IMG/VR virus record: IMGVR_UViG_3300042923_000474
Coordinates: 62,001 to 126,000 of that record
Length of the DNA: 64,000 bases
Strand: one strand, 5' to 3'
In this document: piece after piece, positions 32,245 to 40,956 of the stretch
Layout: the number at the start of each line of letters is the position of its first letter
Position numbering within the stretch: position 1 is the stretch's first letter
Notes under the pieces: generated by a model
What the model was told of the DNA's origin: nothing
The model's input: the letters and a program-made list of their open reading frames with translations, nothing else
Database searches by the model: none
Program-made: the position numbers and the translations under genes

Positions 32245-32718
32245 TTACTTGATCTTGGAAAGCACCATGGAGATGAATTCCTCTAGGGATTTGGCGATGA
32301 TCTGCCGTTTAGGTTTACCGGTGCGGAAAAGGATGATCTGACCCCGTCGCCCACCGGCTGCTGGCGCTTGGTCAATGCAGTAATAGTCTGCCCCATTGAT
32401 TTTGGCAAACGGAATCCACGCAGGGTTCCACCAGGTAGCTGCGACCCCAGAGTCCGGCACAGCTTTCTTGTCGTCGGTCTTGCCATCGGTGTAGGTCTCG
32501 TTGAAACCTTTCCAGAGGGTCAACACCTTCTGATGAGGCAGGAATACAATCTTGCCCCCTTCAGTCTTGATGGACATCCCGTTGGATTGTTCCAGCGCAG
32601 AGCGCAGGTCCTTGGGCATGTCGATCTTTGCTTTCTGTTCGTTCGCATCGGCCTTGGCCTTATCGAGTTCAGGTCCCTTTTTTACACCTTCCGGCAGGGA
32701 TGACAAGTTAACGGCCAT
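32245..32718 (-). CDS. SMI1/KNR4 (SUKH) family immunity-like protein
   Basis: MPKDLRSALEQSNG, WWNPAWIPFA, DYYCIDQAP..GG..GQIILF, IAKSLEEFI. Confidence 0.85.
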   Translation of the reverse strand: MAVNLSSLPEGVKKGPELDKAKADANEQKAKIDMPKDLRSALEQSNGMSIKTEGGKIVFLPHQKVLTLWKGFNETYTDGKTDDKKAVPDSGVAATWWNPAWIPFAKINGADYYCIDQAPAAGGRRGQIILFRTGKPKRQIIAKSLEEFISMVLSKIK

Positions 32719-33926: not shown

Positions 33927-34625
33927 TTAACGTGGTTGCCTGAAAGATTGCTTGGATCTGTGGCGTATTACTGAGCCCCGCATCTTCTTGGTACGGTTCT
34001 GCCGCTTACGGTTGCGCAGGATGTCCAGCGTGACCATTTGCAACAGTACATCACAGATGAGGTTGTGTGCAGCATCCGCGCGCTCTGGAGACATCCCTAC
34101 GACGTACTGTTGCATGGTGTCTGCATCCATCACAATGTCGCCCGGCAGTGGACCATCAGGACGACCCAACGCATCACCACCGTGCCACATCGGAGGAACC
34201 TTGACGTTGCGCAGGGGTTCTGGGATGTCGACAACGACGGGGCCAAAGGCATTTAAGAAGGTGGGTTCAAAGTCCGGCGTAGATTTTCTTTCACCACGCA
34301 ACATTGTTTGAACACTGGGTTGCAGGTGACTGTCGCACAGGCCGAAGCTTAAAACGTCTTCGCCTTTACCTAGGCCATTGACCAAACCGACCTCGGAGAT
34401 AACTGCGTAGGCTTGACCTTTGTGCTGGGTCATGTTCACCTCGTAGACCTTACCGTTAGACAACTCCAACGGTGCCTGGATGATGTCTAACAGCTCCTTT
34501 GGGAACTCGTAGAGGTGCCGGGCAATACCTGTCTTCTCCTCGACAGGTTCAGCAACCTTCGGAGCGTCACCTATCCGGGTGATCTCCATGGCGGTTATGT
34601 CGCACAGCTTATTGCCTTTTTCCAT
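33927..34625 (-). CDS. Hypothetical protein with an Arg/Lys-rich C-terminus
   Basis: Start moved to ATG 34625; overlap-coupled. Confidence 0.65.
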   Translation of the reverse strand: MEKGNKLCDITAMEITRIGDAPKVAEPVEEKTGIARHLYEFPKELLDIIQAPLELSNGKVYEVNMTQHKGQAYAVISEVGLVNGLGKGEDVLSFGLCDSHLQPSVQTMLRGERKSTPDFEPTFLNAFGPVVVDIPEPLRNVKVPPMWHGGDALGRPDGPLPGDIVMDADTMQQYVVGMSPERADAAHNLICDVLLQMVTLDILRNRKRQNRTKKMRGSVIRHRSKQSFRQPR

Positions 34626-35220
34626 GATTGATATCTCGAATGGCTTGTTGTAAAGGTGGGAGGATCTCTTGTTGAGGTCCCATGTAATCGCAATGGCCGA
34701 TAGTTCCCACATTGACAATGGGTTTCTTCAGCCCGGCCAGAGGATCTTCGTACATACCACCCCACGCCTTGTACGAGACGGTGTAGCGATCACGCCATGG
34801 CTCGATAGCGATCACGTTGGCAGCGATCATGTAGCGAGTCATGGCCTCTGCATCACGCAGGTGCACGATGTGGTCATGGAGAGGATCTGCCAGCGGCCCA
34901 CCGAACATGGGTTCCATGCTGCACTTGGTGTGCCCGGTGTAATACAAGATGCGCTCATTGGGATCACGCTCGTCTACGACCCGCCTGGTCCTTAGGTCGT
35001 AACCACGCGCACGATAAACCGAGTGACGGTGTGCATTGGGTTCAACGACCGATTGGAGTGGAGAGTTCTCCAACATCTCCACATGGGCTGCATGGATTTT
35101 GGATTGGTAGAATTCATTGCGGGCTTTATGCCACTCGTCCATGGCTTGCTCGTGGGCCAATTCCCCTTTCTCAAAGAGGCGATGCCAGCTGCTCTTCTTG
35201 AAGCTTACAAAGGTATCCAT
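34609..35220 (-). CDS. Hypothetical protein with an EF-Tu-like peptide KPIVNVGTIGHCD
   Basis: 203 aa; motif encoded at 34687-34725. Confidence 0.7.
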   Translation of the reverse strand: MDTFVSFKKSSWHRLFEKGELAHEQAMDEWHKARNEFYQSKIHAAHVEMLENSPLQSVVEPNAHRHSVYRARGYDLRTRRVVDERDPNERILYYTGHTKCSMEPMFGGPLADPLHDHIVHLRDAEAMTRYMIAANVIAIEPWRDRYTVSYKAWGGMYEDPLAGLKKPIVNVGTIGHCDYMGPQQEILPPLQQAIRDINHGKRQ

Positions 35221-36353
35221 TGATCTTCTACCCGATAAGAGAAGGAAGGTTCGCCAGCTCTAACCTTAACCTGCACGCGGTTTGGGCCGACAGCCTTAAT
35301 GACCTCACGATCAAAGAGGCATTCCAATTGACCCTCAGTTACGAGGGGGTGATTGCCATGTTCCTTAACCACCTCATTCCATGCAGTGATCGCTGCAAAC
35401 TTCAGCTCTTCGGTACTCATAGGCGCCTTGACCGACGGCATGATTATCGAGGAACCTGTGTCGATGCGACGGAAGTGGTGACCTTCACGAGGCCTGATGC
35501 CCGGCAGGCTGTATACCCACTCGCCATCGCCAGCCTTGAACTTGAAGCTGACCTTGTCGTACTTCTCATCCTTCCAGATGGCCTCAGCGGAAACCATCTC
35601 TGGTCCAACTTCACGCCAGAAGTCTTGGAACTTGGTTGCCACGACGGTGTGAGGTGGGCTTTGGTGATGGGCGAAGTACACCATGGTGAAGCTCCACGCT
35701 TTCTGAGCCAGTTCTTCATACGTGGCCAATGAGCTGGGTGTGGGATATCGTGAGGAAGGCTCTACCGTGACCGTAGGGAAGTAGATCTCAGCGAACTGTG
35801 CCGGCTTCCCGCCCAGATATTCATCCAGCGAGATCGGACGCTCAATCTCTTTCCACTCACCCCAGACCAGTTGCTCGTAACGCACACCCATGCCGACGAA
35901 ACGAACACGAGCCAGCTCGGAGCCAAACTTCTCACGAGCAGCCCGTGCAAATTCAGCCTGCATGTGCTCGCCGTAGCGGTCGCGGTTAGCGGAGTAAATG
36001 CGGCTCCATGTTTCATCGCACCATTCCCACGTTGGGCCGTCTACCATCTCTTCCCTGTAGTAGTCGCCGATGGAGAGGGCCGGTGGGAACAGAGGAGGGG
36101 TGCCGATCGCCTTTTTCTCAATCTCTGACCACGTCAGCATGTCGCCGTCCATATCGCCCGGTGTCTTGTCAGGATACTGAGGCAGTGTACGGATGGCATC
36201 CCATGCGTAACGTTCAGCTTTCGCGCCGAGGATACGTGTGAAGAAGTATTCTGGATTAACCCTGACTTCTTCCAGAATGAGTTCCTTCTGCTCCTGAGTC
36301 AGGTTCGGCGAGAAAGGGTCAAGCGCCTTTACGTTCTTGTTAATCAGTTCCAT
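35205..36353 (-). CDS. Hypothetical protein with a terminase-N-like first 40 aa
   Basis: ALDPFSPNLTQEQKELILEEVRVNPEYFFTRIL; start moved to ATG 36353. Confidence 0.7.
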   Translation of the reverse strand: MELINKNVKALDPFSPNLTQEQKELILEEVRVNPEYFFTRILGAKAERYAWDAIRTLPQYPDKTPGDMDGDMLTWSEIEKKAIGTPPLFPPALSIGDYYREEMVDGPTWEWCDETWSRIYSANRDRYGEHMQAEFARAAREKFGSELARVRFVGMGVRYEQLVWGEWKEIERPISLDEYLGGKPAQFAEIYFPTVTVEPSSRYPTPSSLATYEELAQKAWSFTMVYFAHHQSPPHTVVATKFQDFWREVGPEMVSAEAIWKDEKYDKVSFKFKAGDGEWVYSLPGIRPREGHHFRRIDTGSSIIMPSVKAPMSTEELKFAAITAWNEVVKEHGNHPLVTEGQLECLFDREVIKAVGPNRVQVKVRAGEPSFSYRVEDQWIPL

Positions 36354-36729
36354 GCTGTTCCCCCACAGTTGTAATGTCAGTAAGTTGGTAAGCTTCTTTC
36401 CCGTCGACGCAGACCGAGATAGCATTGAACGGTTCGCCCACAGGGATCGCAGTGATGCGCCCATGGATCTCCACCGGCAGCTTAACGGAGTTAGCCTTCT
36501 CCACAATTGCTCGGGCCAGTGTGACGTGAATGTCTTCGCCTTCCAGTTGGACATTGGTTTCATCGTCCAATGCCAAGTCAACTACCTGACAGGCAATCCA
36601 CAAGCGTTGACTGGTCGCCAAGGCCTCTGGGTTGCTGTCGTACATGGTGGACAGAGTCGGGTACTGCATTGCGCGCAGCATCTCGGTGGCTTGATCTGCT
36701 TCAACCTGAGGGATGAATTGCTTTACCAT
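36340..36729 (-). CDS. Hypothetical protein (129 aa)
   Basis: GGAG RBS. Confidence 0.7.
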   Translation of the reverse strand: MVKQFIPQVEADQATEMLRAMQYPTLSTMYDSNPEALATSQRLWIACQVVDLALDDETNVQLEGEDIHVTLARAIVEKANSVKLPVEIHGRITAIPVGEPFNAISVCVDGKEAYQLTDITTVGEQHGTD

Positions 36730-36943: not shown

Positions 36944-37774
36944 TTACTTCTGCTCAGCCTGATCTTTCTTGGCCTGCTCTTCAGCAGCCAGATCTTCAGC
37001 CGACTTTTCTACAGGCGCCGGAGCGTCGGTATTTGGTTTGTCGGTATTGACCTGTTCCAGGCCGGCAGCAGAGCTGGCAGCAGGTGGAACCTGTTCAGGG
37101 TTTGGCGCAGAGGGCAGATCGTTGCTTGCAGGCACAGCGCCTTCAAGTACGGTCTTTTCTTCTGGCAGTTTCATGTCGGTTGGAGCAGAGCCAGTTTGTG
37201 CTTCAGCGGCCACTTCCGAAGTGGTCACAACCACTGCAGAGTCAGGCTGCCCTTCAACTGGTGCTGCACCCGCTTGACGACCAGCGTCAGAGATGGTCAG
37301 ACCGTTGTCAGCCGACGGAGCGACGTATTCAACGCCGTTCTGTTCGTTCAGAGAGGCATTGCCCTCGTGCAGAACATTGTCGACCACAGGGGCTTGCAGG
37401 TCTTCACCAGCGCCATTGCGGTGACTGCCCGGAGCCCAGGTGCCCACCACTTCGCTTTCGTGCAGGACGTTGGCTTTACGCTCGCCTTGGCTACCGTCAG
37501 AGACGGACACTGCCAGAAGGGCCAGACGCGGGTGGTGGTTGGTGGCCAACTGGTTGAATCGACGGACGAAGGTCGACGTTTCCAGATGTTCCTTGTTGGC
37601 CTCGGCCACACCGACAACCTCATTGATGAGGACGCCAACTTTCGACTTGATGACATCGGTCGAAGGTTCCGGGGTGTTGTCGCGTTTCGGTTCAGTTGCC
37701 TGAGCCTTCACTTGAGCGTCTGCAGCTTGGGTGCGCTGCTGCTCTTGCTGGCGACGTTGGTTCTTCTTGGACAT
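36944..37774 (-). CDS. Acidic, largely disordered hypothetical protein (276 aa)
   Basis: GGAG RBS; Ala/Glu/Pro/Gln-rich. Confidence 0.7.
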   Translation of the reverse strand: MSKKNQRRQQEQQRTQAADAQVKAQATEPKRDNTPEPSTDVIKSKVGVLINEVVGVAEANKEHLETSTFVRRFNQLATNHHPRLALLAVSVSDGSQGERKANVLHESEVVGTWAPGSHRNGAGEDLQAPVVDNVLHEGNASLNEQNGVEYVAPSADNGLTISDAGRQAGAAPVEGQPDSAVVVTTSEVAAEAQTGSAPTDMKLPEEKTVLEGAVPASNDLPSAPNPEQVPPAASSAAGLEQVNTDKPNTDAPAPVEKSAEDLAAEEQAKKDQAEQK

Positions 37775-37827: not shown

Positions 37828-38121
37828 TCAGGAGTGCAGGATTTCCAGCACGTGATCCACCAGATCCTGGCCCTCTTTCAGCTCAGGTGTCATGGGGTAC
37901 AAATTCTCAGCCTTGGTACGGTTCAGGCGGAACTGCTTGAACACAGGAGGACCCTCGCCGTACCACTGACCTTTATCGGCTACCATGACCGAGTAGCGTC
38001 CTTGCTTGGCGCCGAGGTGATGTACACGCTTATCACCGATCATGACTTTGTTGGCGTTGAAGAAGCAAAGACGCAGGTGGTCTGTGGGTACCGAAGTACC
38101 CATCACGTTAAGCCCACTCAT
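37828..38121 (-). CDS. Hypothetical protein (97 aa)
   Basis: Start moved to ATG 38121, TAATG overlap with the upstream stop. Confidence 0.6.
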   Translation of the reverse strand: MSGLNVMGTSVPTDHLRLCFFNANKVMIGDKRVHHLGAKQGRYSVMVADKGQWYGEGPPVFKQFRLNRTKAENLYPMTPELKEGQDLVDHVLEILHS

Positions 38122-38411
38122 TACGAAATCTCGACGTCGGCCAGTTTCAGGAAGCGGTGGTACCAGTACGACCAGTTGTGACGGCATTCCAGACGAATGG
38201 CTTCACGCTGCTCTTCGGTAACATCCGGGCTGAAGGGGTCCAGCTCTTTCAGGGCAGGGTTGACGTAGTACAGGCCTTCCGGTACCTGGATGAGTTTAGA
38301 AGCAGCTGCACGCTGCTCCTGAGTCATCTCCTCGTAACGGCGAGCCAACTTGATGCTCTCATCGTTTTCGAGGAAGGTGGCGTCAAACTTAAATTCACTA
38401 TCGGTATTCAT
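38121..38411 (-). CDS. Stand-alone 96-aa protein resembling the N-terminus of phiKZ-like large terminase
   Basis: NDESIKLARRYEEM...NPALKELDPFSPDVTEEQREAIRLECRHNWSYW; TAATG-coupled to SbcC. Confidence 0.65.
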   Translation of the reverse strand: MNTDSEFKFDATFLENDESIKLARRYEEMTQEQRAAASKLIQVPEGLYYVNPALKELDPFSPDVTEEQREAIRLECRHNWSYWYHRFLKLADVEIS

Positions 38412-40891
38412 TAACTAATCTCCACATGCAGATTGGCGTCGGCTGGACGCGTGATATTTCGGTCATCCAATACCACGAACTCGGCTTGGTTAAATGAACC
38501 ATAGACCGACGAATAGTGACTGACCATGAACAACTGACTGAACCGACCCTGCTCCATCAGCGACTGAATGTAATTGACCAGACGCTCGCGGTGCTCATCG
38601 TCAAAGTCCTTACCGAACTCATCGGCCAGCAATGGGAAGTCGTGTAAACCTGTCAACTCCATCACCACCAACTTGAACACCCAGTCAATCATCGAGACCT
38701 GACCGGTAGACCCATCGGCAATATCGCCATCGGGGTTCGGTTGGTTGTTGACAATGATCGGGAGTTTCACGTTGAGGGTAGCGCCTTCCTCCAAGACCGC
38801 ATCAATCTCCATCGGGTACGTCCACACCATCGCAATGTGTTCGTTGATCATCCCAGTGAAGTGACGAATGAAGTTCTTGGTGATGTCTGCCACAATGCCA
38901 TGAGTAGGTGACAGGGCGCGAGCCAGTAACTTGTACGACGTGAAGCGAGACTCCACATCAATCAGCTCACTGCGAGAGTTCTCGTAACGGGCTTGTAGGT
39001 CACGGTAACGCTGGGTGGATTGGTGCAGGGTAGCCAGACGGGTCATCACCTTGCCACGCACCTGATCCAGATGCTCATCACGCAGTGCATCTTCCACTTG
39101 CTTACGCAGGGAGTTGAACGATTCAATGGCGTTGGACATCTCCATCATCAGAGTATCCAACTTCTCCAAGTGATAGAGTTCCTCACTGAGTTGGGCCATT
39201 GCGATCGTTGCCTGGTTCACCGCCTCGTACTTGTCGTGCAGCTCACCTTCGAGCAGGTCAGCACGCTGCAGCAGGAACTTAGGATCACCACTGTTCTTGA
39301 TCAGCTCCAGACGCGATGTGAGGTCCTTTAGCTCTGCAGTGATACGCTTGGCGTAAGCAGTGTCCAAAAGCTTTCTAATCGTGTCTGAGAGCGCCACAGA
39401 GATCATGGCAGGGTTAGTGCGTACATAACCTCGTTCACTCACCATCTCCCAGAAAGCAGACAACACTTTGGAGCCTTCACGAATACGAGCCAACTCACCG
39501 AGCTTACGGCTGTAGTCATCAAAGTCTGAGATGTGGACAGACAACTCCTCCATCTCCCGCTGAGCCTGCTCCACCTTTTGACGACGACTGTCCAACCGCG
39601 CCTGAGTTTGCTCAACCAACCCAGCAGGCCAGCCCGGCTTGAAGGTGTGTTCACACTTAGGGCAGTTGGTATCAGCGGTGTGGGTCGCATGTTCCAGCGT
39701 CGCCTCCATCTTGGAGATGACGTTGTTGGATTCAATGCACCACTGACTGAGTTTGGTGTAGCGCTCCATCCTTTCAGAGTGAGTACCACGAGCGTACAGT
39801 CCTTCGGTGTTGGCAGGGATCGTGACGCACAGTTCAGTCAGTTGCTGCTGGATACCTTCCGCTACGGCCAGCAACGCTTCAGGAGACTCGCTACCGCATT
39901 CGTAGAGACTGCCTTGAGCTTGGATACCCGCCAGCTCTTCTTCGATCTGTGCAACGCGTGTAGTGAGCTGAGAAGGATCGTCCAAAGACTCACGACCTAC
40001 GTGACGGATCAGCGACTGGATACCTTCCAGTGCTTTCTCATGGGTGTCACACTCCCCACGGGTCTTCATCATCCGATCACGCAGCGAGGAGATCTCGCCA
40101 TCCACCTGCTCTTTGGTCTTGCCACCGTACTTGGAGTTGTCACGAATGACCGTCTCCGCCACGATGGTTTGAGAGCGCTGGTGAATGGTCTTGTACGCGT
40201 CCTGCATGCGCTTGATCAGACCACTGGAATCGGCTACCGACATTCGGCCATTCAAAGCGTGGTTGAGTTCAATGCCCAACTGCTTGAGTTGAGTGACCTC
40301 ATCATCCGTGTCCTTGAAGTCATCCTCCATAGAACGGATCTCATCGGACATGTCATGTGTCAGGTCCAGCAGGTACTTCATCGTACCCTGCATGTCACGG
40401 GCTTTGACACGAAACTGTTCGAACAGACCCAACACGTAATCAAAGTCAGTCCCTGAGATACGCATCATCCACTCACGGCGTTTGGAGGGACTCATCTGAG
40501 ACAGGCGTGCTCGTCCTGTCAGAATGTCACTCACCTCTTGGGTCAACCCCACGTAACGCTCTACCAACTCTTTCTGAGTGGCCTGAGTGTTGCCGTCGTT
40601 CAGCTGAACACCGTTCATGTTAAAGGTGTGGTGACCGGCCTTAACGTTATAGACGCTGATCAGGTTGAAGTTTGAATCGTTGTGTTCGAAGAAGTATTCG
40701 ACACCACCACCTTTGTGGAAACGGCTACCGTTAGGCACAAGGTTCAGAATCGCTTGTAGCAAAGAACTTTTACCTGCCCCGTTACTGCCCAGCACAATTT
40801 GTTCCTGTGACTGCGGCGTATATTCGAAGCGCCAAATACCCGCTAGGTCAAAAGACTTGTAGCCGGTTAGGATGATTTTGAGAAGACGCAT
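38411..40891 (-). CDS. sbcC: SbcC/Rad50-like SMC ATPase
   Basis: Walker A GSNGAGKS, coiled coils, central CPKC zinc hook, signature GSTGQ, Walker B LLADE, H-loop MVSH. Confidence 0.92.
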   Translation of the reverse strand: MRLLKIILTGYKSFDLAGIWRFEYTPQSQEQIVLGSNGAGKSSLLQAILNLVPNGSRFHKGGGVEYFFEHNDSNFNLISVYNVKAGHHTFNMNGVQLNDGNTQATQKELVERYVGLTQEVSDILTGRARLSQMSPSKRREWMMRISGTDFDYVLGLFEQFRVKARDMQGTMKYLLDLTHDMSDEIRSMEDDFKDTDDEVTQLKQLGIELNHALNGRMSVADSSGLIKRMQDAYKTIHQRSQTIVAETVIRDNSKYGGKTKEQVDGEISSLRDRMMKTRGECDTHEKALEGIQSLIRHVGRESLDDPSQLTTRVAQIEEELAGIQAQGSLYECGSESPEALLAVAEGIQQQLTELCVTIPANTEGLYARGTHSERMERYTKLSQWCIESNNVISKMEATLEHATHTADTNCPKCEHTFKPGWPAGLVEQTQARLDSRRQKVEQAQREMEELSVHISDFDDYSRKLGELARIREGSKVLSAFWEMVSERGYVRTNPAMISVALSDTIRKLLDTAYAKRITAELKDLTSRLELIKNSGDPKFLLQRADLLEGELHDKYEAVNQATIAMAQLSEELYHLEKLDTLMMEMSNAIESFNSLRKQVEDALRDEHLDQVRGKVMTRLATLHQSTQRYRDLQARYENSRSELIDVESRFTSYKLLARALSPTHGIVADITKNFIRHFTGMINEHIAMVWTYPMEIDAVLEEGATLNVKLPIIVNNQPNPDGDIADGSTGQVSMIDWVFKLVVMELTGLHDFPLLADEFGKDFDDEHRERLVNYIQSLMEQGRFSQLFMVSHYSSVYGSFNQAEFVVLDDRNITRPADANLHVEIS

Positions 40892-40956
40892 GGGTAGGCT
40901 TTCCGTATTCGTAGGCATTCGCTAATAAGTGCCCCCAATCTGTTAGGAGATACACG

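What the first reader, a model, noticed from the sequence alone, without database searches (positions are those of the whole stretch)
36228..36353. Second terminase-N-like segment fused to an unrelated 380-aa protein
Seen: the first 42 aa of ORF 35205-36353 (ALDPFSPNLTQEQKELILEEVRVNPEYFFTRIL) parallel the motif in 38121-38411, about 2 kb away, while the remainder is unrelated. Inference: the segment is a portable module, such as a targeting tag for the packaging motor or phage nucleus, or an immune decoy.
Basis: partly seen in the sequence, partly recalled or inferred. Interest (0 to 1): 0.62.

Follow-up and report, generated by a model that had tools for sequence, protein, structure and literature searches.

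The report
Portable terminase-N peptide module on phage proteins
A roughly 40-residue piece copied long ago from the front end of the DNA-packaging enzyme of nucleus-forming giant phages sits on two extra proteins here and on dozens of unrelated proteins in related phages; it looks like a reusable binding handle or mimic whose target is still unknown.

Summary
The window lies in a 231.7-kb jumbo phage that encodes chimallin and is therefore expected to form a phage nucleus. A profile of the terminase (TerL) N-terminus, built only from other phages, finds three places in this genome. These are the real TerL (outside the window), ORF382 residues 1-42 and ORF96 residues 47-88.

- **Age:** the copies are old paralogs, with silent sites saturated and the amino acids kept.
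- **Structure in TerL:** the segment is a conserved coil plus two short helices just ahead of the ATP-binding site.
- **Spread:** the same module occurs in about 35 non-TerL proteins. It is N-terminal in 12, C-terminal in 9, internal in 8 and stand-alone in 6, and one carrier is a thymidylate kinase.
- **Origin:** these tags cluster apart from TerL modules and never group with their own phage's TerL.
- **Accessory and unstable:** ORF96 is a cassette between 19-nt repeats and is missing in relatives. ORF382 keeps its tag and C-terminus while its middle is replaced. In two runs whose flanks are over 95% identical, ORF382 is replaced altogether.

So "portable module" is supported. Its function is not shown. 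I favour a TerL-N mimic that binds whatever recognises that part of TerL. A cargo address for the nucleus or packaging site is the main rival. I found no description of it.

The parts
36228..36353 (-). TerL-N tag of ORF382 (aa 1-42): a coil with DP-aromatic, then two short helices (LTxEQK..ILEE., NPxYFF)
   Evidence: BLASTP against ORF96; TerL-only profile E 3.5e-11; AF2 helices at 20-32 and 34-41; nearly invariant in homologs; pN/pS 0.22 against L006
35205..36353 (-). ORF382: tag, then a conserved stretch to about aa 75, a variable low-confidence middle (aa 58-209), and two small alpha/beta domains (about 210-283 and 310-382)
   Evidence: Homologs P0005-7, P0010-14 and P0051; AF2 mean pLDDT 57.5; no fold match above Z 5.4; no Pfam or NCBIfam family; replaced by 240 nt in runs X6 and X7, with a mosaic middle in X3 and X9
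38148..38273 (-). TerL-N tag of ORF96 (aa 47-88)
38121..38411 (-). ORF96: an orphan 96-aa gene, essentially a tag plus 46 upstream residues. Its start overlaps the SbcC stop (TAATG) and its stop overlaps the next gene's start (TAATG)
   Evidence: Sequence read; only itself found among 5.8 billion proteins in its length range; absent in L006 and L128 and in run X9 (joint 38126>38417)
38407..38425 (-). Junction repeat copy 1: the last codons of SbcC (VEIS), the stop and the overlapping ATG
   Evidence: 14 of 19 bases match copy 2, which lies 290 nt away; L006 has a single such junction
38117..38135 (-). Junction repeat copy 2: the last codons of ORF96 (also VEIS), the stop and the overlapping ATG of the 97-aa gene
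   Evidence: X9 skips exactly the 290 nt between the repeats, with 6 nt of ambiguity
38411..40918 (-). SbcC/gp46-like ATPase, first gene of the operon that carries both tag genes (context)
   Evidence: PHROG 77 at 1.1e-73 and Pfam SMC_N
34609..35220 (-). ORF203, the conserved downstream partner of ORF382 (its start overlaps the end of ORF382). It carries an EF-Tu-like 15-mer at 34684-34728
   Evidence: the tag and this motif are fused in one 119-aa protein, P0031, at the same locus of another phage
36340..36729 (-). ORF129, a lineage-specific insertion just upstream of ORF382 (context)
   Evidence: Absent in L006, where a 187-nt spacer with a hairpin lies instead

Best explanation
ORF382 and ORF96 each carry a copy of a roughly 38-aa module, here called the TerL-N tag. 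It has an extended coil with an invariant D-P-aromatic, then two short helices with the signatures LTxEQK, I..EC and NPxYF. The module arose from the N-terminal cap of the ATPase domain of the large terminase of chimallin-encoding jumbo phages. It now exists as a free, shuffled domain family. Shown here: homology to TerL, old age, purifying selection, portability, separateness from the resident TerL, and the accessory and unstable nature of both genes. Inferred: the tag is itself the active part. I propose that it works as a mimic of the TerL N-terminal cap and binds the still unidentified factor that recognises this part of TerL. That factor could be a conserved phage partner at the nucleus or packaging site, or a host sensor of terminase. 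The tag would then compete with, regulate or shield TerL, and the attached cargo would be secondary.
For: There are three copies in the genome and no more. Nucleotide identity among them is 42-49%, with third codon positions no better than the others, while 11-19 of 42 residues are kept. In TerL the module is a coil (47-62) plus helices 63-75 and 77-84, directly before the Walker A motif, in a model with pLDDT 94 whose best fold match is T4 gp17. A profile search of 1.84 billion proteins gave 50 hits, of which only six have TerL length. Positions are 12 N-terminal, 9 C-terminal, 8 internal and 6 stand-alone of 54-76 aa. One stand-alone tag, P0020, was checked in its contig and lies just upstream of an intact TerL. 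At the locus downstream of SbcC the tag is the constant part, while the protein varies from 102 and 119 aa to 314 and 382 aa. Tags keep the residues shared with TerL, add their own conserved positions (EQK, LEE), and lose the TerL-only positions (W after NP, REV.R.P.GD). Tags cluster apart from TerL modules: 4 label changes against 19 in shuffles, and a single clade is not rejected (p-AU 0.81). None groups with its own phage's TerL. Own tags are 32-35% identical to own TerL but 41-53% identical to other TerLs and tags. Distribution is patchy: 13 of 313 database phages and 5 of 25 large IMG/VR records have a second copy. Presence varies among related strains and relatives, as is usual for accessory genes.
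Against: No binding partner was identified. The only complex prediction, full TerL with ORF382 residues 1-75, gave no answer. In TerL the module looks like an integral part of the ATPase fold, so its conservation in tags could reflect only the hairpin's own stability. Fusions to real enzymes such as thymidylate kinase and to a protein in a sugar-nucleotide cluster fit a delivery address better than a pure mimic. Only one of the stand-alone mini-proteins was checked in its genomic context. ORF96 has no homologs, so selection on it cannot be measured.
Confidence: 0.4

Rival explanations
1. Address tag. The module is a transferable localisation signal that takes its cargo where TerL goes, either into the phage nucleus (licensed by the Imp1/PicA import system) or to the capsid-docking and packaging site on the nuclear shell.
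For: The phage encodes homologs of chimallin, Imp1/PicA and Imp3, and 6 of 7 other tag-bearing genomes tested encode chimallin. The tags sit mostly at protein termini. Carriers include a thymidylate kinase and a protein in a sugar-nucleotide cluster. Tag genes also lie in operons with SbcC (this window) or DnaB (Noxifer), which are functions that act on DNA inside the nucleus.
Against: Reviews and primary work state that cargo is recognised through surfaces of the folded protein and that no terminal or linear signal is known. Six tags have no cargo at all. At the SbcC locus the cargo is freely replaced while the tag stays. The model phages phiKZ, PhiPA3 and 201phi2-1 appear to have no extra copy, since only 13 of 313 records do. 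Whether TerL itself is imported is not established in the papers I read.
Confidence: 0.25
2. Structural re-use only. The two-helix hairpin is a stable small fold, or a cap for a nucleotide-binding site, that was reused inside different proteins and has no common partner in trans.
For: In TerL it packs on the ATPase core just before the adenine-binding and Walker A region. Some hits are short TerL-like ATPase paralogs in which the module keeps its original setting (P0029, P0036, P0038, P0046, P0047, P0049).
Against: Most carriers have no ATPase core. In the ORF382 model the tag is followed by about 150 low-confidence residues, and the overall pTM is 0.31. Polar helix-1 residues (E-Q-K, L-E-E) are more conserved in tags than in TerL. 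Stand-alone tags exist.
Confidence: 0.15
3. Relic, applying to ORF96 only. ORF96 is a fragment left by illegitimate recombination, kept open by chance and without function.
For: It has no homolog in 5.8 billion proteins within its length range. It is flanked by an imperfect 19-nt repeat and is missing in L006, L128 and run X9.
Against: The frame is intact. Start and stop overlap the neighbouring genes precisely, so translational coupling is kept. It retains the conserved tag residues despite saturated silent sites relative to the other copies. It is also present in X3, X6 and X7 with only a few differences.
Confidence: 0.12
4. A split or interrupted second terminase gene (intron, intein or frameshift), or a similarity at the DNA level such as a repeat or packaging signal.
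For: PHROG terminase hits on both ORFs. Homologs of one carrier are annotated 'putative terminase large subunit' in Erwinia phages Kwan and Wellington.
Against: The genome has a single TerL body, a 726-aa intact ORF. Nothing TerL-like lies downstream of either tag. The gene after the Erwinia carrier is not a terminase. Nucleotide identity between the copies is only 42-49%.
Confidence: 0.02

Closest known systems
N-terminal cap of the ATPase domain of T4 gp17-type large terminases (PHROG 2), as found in phiKZ-like phages
   Same: The sequence is homologous: the same coil plus two-helix motif with the same invariant residues (D-P, E-C, N, Y-F). It maps to PHROG 2 positions 102-148. By register from Walker A it corresponds roughly to gp17 residues 85-125; that mapping is inferred.
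   Different: ORF382 and ORF96 have no ATPase core and no nuclease domain. The tags form their own group, have extra conserved positions, and lack the TerL-only positions that follow the motif.
Capsid-targeting sequences of phage T4 internal proteins and the propeptides of phiKZ-type head proteins (from my own knowledge)
   Same: They are short, transferable, mostly terminal peptides that give unrelated proteins a common destination in a phage assembly pathway.
   Different: Those peptides are about 10 aa or are protease-removed propeptides on virion proteins. The tag here is a folded 38-aa hairpin, also occurs internally and alone, shows no recognisable protease site, and sits on non-structural carriers in replication and recombination operons.
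Protein import into the chimallivirus nucleus by Imp1/PicA
   Same: The phage family is the same, Imp1/PicA and chimallin homologs are present, and TerL acts on DNA that is kept inside the phage nucleus.
   Different: Published work finds recognition of folded surfaces and states that no linear signal is known. No link between the tag and Imp1 was tested here.
Hub-binding peptides of DNA-metabolism proteins, such as clamp-binding and PIP-type motifs (from my own knowledge)
   Same: A short motif, often terminal, is shared by many unrelated proteins of DNA transactions.
   Different: The tag is four to five times longer and helical, and no hub is known for it. This is an analogy only.
Sensing of phage terminase by bacterial Avs immune proteins (structure 8dgc appears among the fold matches of the TerL model), and phage decoys in general
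   Same: TerL is a known target of host pattern recognition, so a TerL mimic could in principle act as a decoy.
   Different: No evidence here that any sensor reads this part of TerL. As I recall, Avs recognition involves large surfaces of both TerL domains.

Membership tests
Large terminase (TerL, T4 gp17 type) | ASCE ATPase core with Walker A and Walker B motifs | tested here: not met
   For ORF382 and ORF96, PHROG 2 matches only positions 102-148 of 807 and there is no Pfam family. The real TerL, at genome 154833-157010, has the core.
Large terminase (TerL, T4 gp17 type) | C-terminal RNase H-like nuclease domain | tested here: not met
   Neither ORF has a match beyond the tag. The C-terminal domains of ORF382 have no clear fold match, best Z 5.4.
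Large terminase (TerL, T4 gp17 type) | N-terminal cap motif before the adenine-binding and Walker A region | tested here: met
   A TerL-only profile hits ORF382 at 3.5e-11 and ORF96 at 4.3e-9.
TerL-N tag (a module family proposed here) | Signature of a D-P-aromatic coil, LTxEQK, I..EC and NPxYF, without the TerL-only continuation | tested here: met
   Alignment of 35 non-TerL copies against 46 TerL copies.
TerL-N tag (a module family proposed here) | Occurs outside TerL in unrelated protein contexts | tested here: met
TerL-N tag (a module family proposed here) | Separate from TerL modules in a tree, and not derived from the resident TerL | tested here: inconclusive
   Labels cluster strongly (4 changes against 19 in shuffles) and a single clade is not rejected (p-AU 0.81). 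However, only 38 columns were available and most forks are unresolved.
Chimalliviridae (nucleus-forming jumbo phages) | Chimallin, Imp1/PicA and other core genes, and a multisubunit RNA polymerase | tested here: met
   tblastn with phiKZ gp54, gp59, gp68, gp69 and gp70 gave E 3e-26 to 2e-9. Pfam RNA_pol_Rpb2_6 hits at 4e-15.
Small terminase (TerS) | Sequence membership in a known TerS family | tested here: not met
   ORF382 and ORF96 have no TerS family hit in Pfam, PHROGs or NCBIfam. Oligomerisation and DNA binding are not testable here.
Capsid-targeting or propeptide tags | Removal by the prohead protease and presence of the carrier in virions | not testable with these tools
   No proteomic data exist for this phage or for the carriers that were found.

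The most novel reading that the evidence does not exclude
The TerL-N tag is a transferable, linear address recognised by the chimallivirus nuclear-shell machinery, either the import factor Imp1/PicA or the pore where capsids dock for packaging. It would be the first portable signal for entering or docking at a phage nucleus. The stand-alone copies would then act as regulators or competitors of that gate.
Probability: 0.15. Interest if true: 0.9.

Novelty: new variant of a known kind. Interest (0 to 1): 0.62.

Why it matters
How proteins are chosen for the phage nucleus, and how the terminase meets the DNA and the docked capsid, are open questions for nucleus-forming jumbo phages. Here is a short, conserved, naturally portable piece of the terminase, attached by evolution to dozens of unrelated proteins. 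It gives a ready-made probe: fuse it to a reporter, pull down with it, or over-express it alone.

- If it is an address, it is a tool for sending proteins to the phage nucleus or the packaging site.
- If it is a mimic or decoy, it points to an unknown regulator or host sensor of terminase.

It also explains a likely annotation error: proteins in Erwinia phages are labelled 'putative terminase large subunit' although, to judge from their homolog in pEa_SNUABM_11, they share only the tag with TerL.

Tried and rejected
- **Complex prediction.** Full-length TerL (43-row alignment) with ORF382 residues 1-75 (20-row alignment) gave no answer, score 0.00. This is evidence neither for nor against binding.
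- **Relaxed TerL cap in tag-bearing genomes.** I asked whether genomes with extra tags have a diverged TerL module. They do not: mean identity 0.56 against 0.56, Mann-Whitney p = 1.
- **DNA-level repeat or signal.** Rejected, because nucleotide identity between copies is 42-49%.
- **Split or intron-interrupted TerL.** Rejected. There is one intact TerL, and the gene after the Erwinia carrier is not a terminase.
- **ORF96 as a copy of the whole TerL N-terminus (residues 1-95).** Only the module is significant. The 46 residues before it score E 0.05-0.2 in a three-sequence search, although tblastn alignments stretch weakly to residue 12.
- **Fold of the ORF382 cargo.** The AF2 model is poor (pLDDT 57.5) and the best structural match has Z 5.4. 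The ESM Atlas search gave nothing usable.
- **Family libraries.** Pfam, NCBIfam and PHROGs give no family for ORF382, ORF96 or their small neighbours.
- **EF-Tu Pfam model on this genome.** No match.
- **Near-identical database phage.** None found by megablast.
- **Seeing the 240 nt that replace ORF382 in runs X6 and X7.** Not possible. Look-up by the identical neighbouring protein returned only the source contig, and the IMG/VR relative G026 does not cover the locus.
- **Literature.** Five full-text searches and six papers read gave no description of the module (papers).

Full report
**1. What the window is**

The window is bases 62001-126000 of a 231,724-bp virus record with direct terminal repeats. 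The phage encodes homologs of several phiKZ proteins, found by tblastn:
- chimallin (gp54), E 3e-26;
- Imp3 (gp59), gp68, Imp1/PicA (gp69, E 2e-9), gp70 and SbcD.

It also has a fragment of a multisubunit RNA polymerase beta subunit and phiKZ-type virion protein families. It is therefore a member of the chimallin-encoding group of jumbo phages, which form a phage nucleus. No near-identical phage is in the phage database.

**2.

The ORF at 35205-36353 (-) gives 382 aa (ORF382). The ORF at 38121-38411 (-) gives 96 aa (ORF96).
- BLASTP aligns ORF382 residues 4-42 with ORF96 residues 50-88: 19/39 identities, 27/39 positives, no gaps, E 1e-9. Nothing else aligns.
- PHROG 2 (terminase large subunit) matches both segments weakly at the same profile positions, 102-148.
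- The real terminase lies outside the window, at genome 154833-157010. It is an intact 726-aa ORF.
- I built a profile from the first ~95 residues of TerL of 45 other phages, leaving this genome out. Against all 4054 six-frame ORFs of the genome it finds only TerL (1.3e-38), ORF382 (3.5e-11) and ORF96 (4.3e-9). The next hit has E 1.7.

So there are exactly three copies. The start of ORF382 at 36353 is supported by five homologs that begin at the same Met (three others carry a 27-aa extension) and by the source's gene caller.

**3. Age and selection**

The three coding segments share only 42-49% of their nucleotides. Third codon positions are no better conserved than the others, while 11-19 of 42 residues are identical. 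These are old paralogs kept at the protein level, not a recent duplication or a DNA signal. Between ORF382 and its homolog in relative L006 the tag has pS 0.58 and pN 0.13, a ratio of 0.22.

**4. What the segment is in TerL**

An AlphaFold2 model of the TerL N-domain (46-row alignment) has mean pLDDT 94.3.
- The module is a conserved coil (residues 47-62) followed by helices 63-75 and 77-84.
- A beta hairpin, another helix and the Walker A motif follow.
- The best fold matches are the T4 gp17 ATPase domain structures, E about 1e-10.
- A profile search of PDB sequences puts the Walker A motif in register with that of gp17.

By that register the module corresponds to roughly gp17 residues 85-125. 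This mapping is an inference, not an alignment. The module is thus the N-terminal cap of the ATPase domain, just ahead of the adenine-binding region.

**5. Portability**

The N-terminus of ORF382 hits non-terminase genes in cultured phages.
- Pseudomonas phage Noxifer gp119 is 157 aa with an N-terminal tag, directly after DnaB.
- Erwinia phage pEa_SNUABM_11 gene 160 is 431 aa with the tag at residues 325-372. The next gene is not a terminase.
- Each of these genomes has TerL plus one extra copy.
- pEa_SNUABM_54 gene 298 is a further carrier. Vibrio phage BONAISHI ORF227 is a weaker one (E 6.7e-4) and looks like a degenerate TerL paralog.

A profile search of 1.84 billion representative proteins gave 50 hits at E <= 1e-3, and only six are of TerL length. 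After removing one false positive and six short TerL-like ATPase paralogs, 35 non-TerL copies remain. Of these, 12 are N-terminal, 9 C-terminal, 8 internal and 6 stand-alone proteins of 54-76 aa.

Four carriers were checked in their contigs:
- a thymidylate kinase with a C-terminal tag, next to thymidylate synthase;
- a 395-aa protein in a sugar-nucleotide gene cluster;
- a 76-aa stand-alone tag immediately upstream of an intact TerL that has its own module;
- a 119-aa protein at the locus downstream of SbcC in another phage.

Six of seven other tag-bearing genomes tested encode chimallin.

**6. The tags are a family of their own**

Tags and TerL modules share the D-P-aromatic, LT, I..EC, N-P and Y-F positions.
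- Tags add conserved E-Q-K and L-E-E positions.
- Tags lose positions that are invariant only in TerL: the Trp after N-P and the REV.R.P.GD continuation.

In a tree of 32 tags and 26 TerL modules the labels need 4 changes, against 19 in shuffles. A tree with all tags as one clade is not rejected (p-AU 0.81). No tag groups with the TerL of its own genome. With only 38 columns most forks are unresolved. Own tags are 32-35% identical to own TerL but 41-53% identical to other TerLs and tags. One or a few old origins followed by shuffling fits better than repeated capture from the resident gene.

**7. Both genes are accessory and unstable**

Extra copies are a minority trait. They occur in 13 of 313 database phages with a hit and in 5 of 25 large IMG/VR records, none of which has three.

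*ORF96*
- It sits between SbcC and a 97-aa gene.
- Both junctions read VEIS-stop with an overlapping ATG, forming an imperfect 19-nt repeat 290 nt apart.
- The syntenic relatives L006 and L128 have a single junction and no ORF96.
- Contigs of run X9 skip exactly those 290 nt, while X3, X6 and X7 keep ORF96.

*ORF382*
- Its homologs keep the N-terminal ~75 residues and the last ~80, but the middle is replaced.
- In runs X6 and X7, whose flanks are over 95% identical to the window, the whole gene is replaced by 240 nt that I could not read.
- In other relatives the same position holds tag proteins of 102, 119 or 314 aa.

At this locus the tag is the constant part and the cargo is the variable part.

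**8. The cargo**

The ORF382 model is poor, with pLDDT 57.5.
- The tag forms two helices.
- Residues 58-209 are of low confidence.
- Two small alpha/beta domains (about 210-283 and 310-382) are moderately confident.
- No fold match exceeds Z 5.4.
- No family library names the protein.

**9. Mechanism**

*Shown:* homology, age, selection, portability, separateness and accessory status.

*Not shown:* what the tag binds.

I favour a TerL-N mimic that engages whatever recognises this part of TerL, with the tag itself as the active part (confidence 0.4). Four observations point that way:
- stand-alone tags exist;
- the tag is constant at the SbcC locus while the cargo varies;
- tags stay near the family consensus rather than tracking the resident TerL;
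- both genes lie in a variable, accessory stretch of the genome.

The main rival is a delivery address for the phage nucleus or the packaging site (0.25). Enzyme fusions and the replication and recombination operon contexts favour it. The published view that import reads folded surfaces and that no linear signal is known counts against it. Structural re-use without a shared partner (0.15) and, for ORF96 alone, a relic (0.12) remain possible. The single complex prediction allowed gave no answer.

**10. Comparison and novelty**

The segment belongs to the TerL N-terminal cap by sequence, but the two ORFs are not terminases. They lack the ATPase core and the nuclease domain. Five full-text searches and six papers gave no description of such a module. 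In Erwinia phages Kwan and Wellington the match lies in a gene annotated 'putative terminase large subunit'. That is probably an error caused by the tag, but I did not check those two genes themselves. I rate the finding a new variant of a known kind, namely a portable protein module. It becomes much more interesting if it proves to be a localisation signal or a decoy.

Noticed in passing
window 34684-34728 (-), inside ORF203 (34609-35220): A 15-residue stretch matches residues 9-23 of bacterial EF-Tu (first strand and start of the P-loop) at 11 of 15 positions. 33 of the 34 PDB sequence hits are EF-Tu, but E is only 0.2-4, and the Pfam EF-Tu model finds nothing in the genome. The motif is invariant in the ORF203 homologs of L006, L019 and L020. 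In P0031 it is fused to a TerL-N tag in one 119-aa protein. The tag gene and the gene with this motif form a conserved pair downstream of SbcC. It may be a second mimic peptide.
   Followed up: partly
window 38117-38135 and 38407-38425: ORF96 is a cassette bounded by an imperfect 19-nt direct repeat (14/19) that contains the last four codons, the stop and the overlapping start of the next gene. The Ser codon differs at all three bases between the copies (AGT against TCG). Run X9 and relatives L006 and L128 lack the cassette.
   Followed up: yes
window 35258-36358: In contigs of runs X6 and X7, whose flanks are over 95% identical to the window, all of ORF382 and the last six codons of ORF129 are replaced by 240 nt that could not be read. 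X3 and X9 carry ORF382 alleles with several replaced middle segments.
   Followed up: partly
window 36340-36729 (-): ORF129 is present here but absent in relative L006, which instead has a 187-nt spacer with a GC-rich hairpin and T run upstream of the ORF382 homolog. No family hit.
   Followed up: no
window 32245-32718 (-): The 157-aa ORF at the end of the same gene string belongs to the SUKH/SMI1_KNR4 families, according to the precomputed Pfam hits of its homologs. By my recollection these are typical immunity proteins of polymorphic toxin systems. It is 87% identical in L006.
   Followed up: no
metagenomic proteins P0036, P0038, P0046, P0047 (about 270 aa), P0029, P0049; loci L056, L061, L066: These are short TerL-like proteins that keep the module and a Walker A-like motif but lack the nuclease domain. 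Several end with the same ...LIRC tail. They may be ATPase-only terminase paralogs or split terminases.
   Followed up: no
Erwinia phages Kwan (about 120.6 kb) and Wellington (about 119.1 kb), hits H35-H38: The match to the pEa_SNUABM_11 gene 160 tag lies in genes annotated 'putative terminase large subunit'. Gene 160 itself shares only the tag with TerL, and each of these genomes has a second match elsewhere, presumably the real TerL. This is probably a misannotation, but I did not check those two genes directly.
   Followed up: partly
locus L015:6001-6819 (protein P0052): A complete thymidylate kinase (Pfam 1.9e-22) carries the TerL-N tag at its C-terminus, next to a thymidylate synthase gene on a 36.5-kb contig.
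   Followed up: partly
window 36944-37774 (-): The 276-aa ORF between the two tag genes is rich in Ala, Pro, Glu and Gln and looks low in complexity. It is 65% identical in L006 and has no family hit.
   Followed up: no
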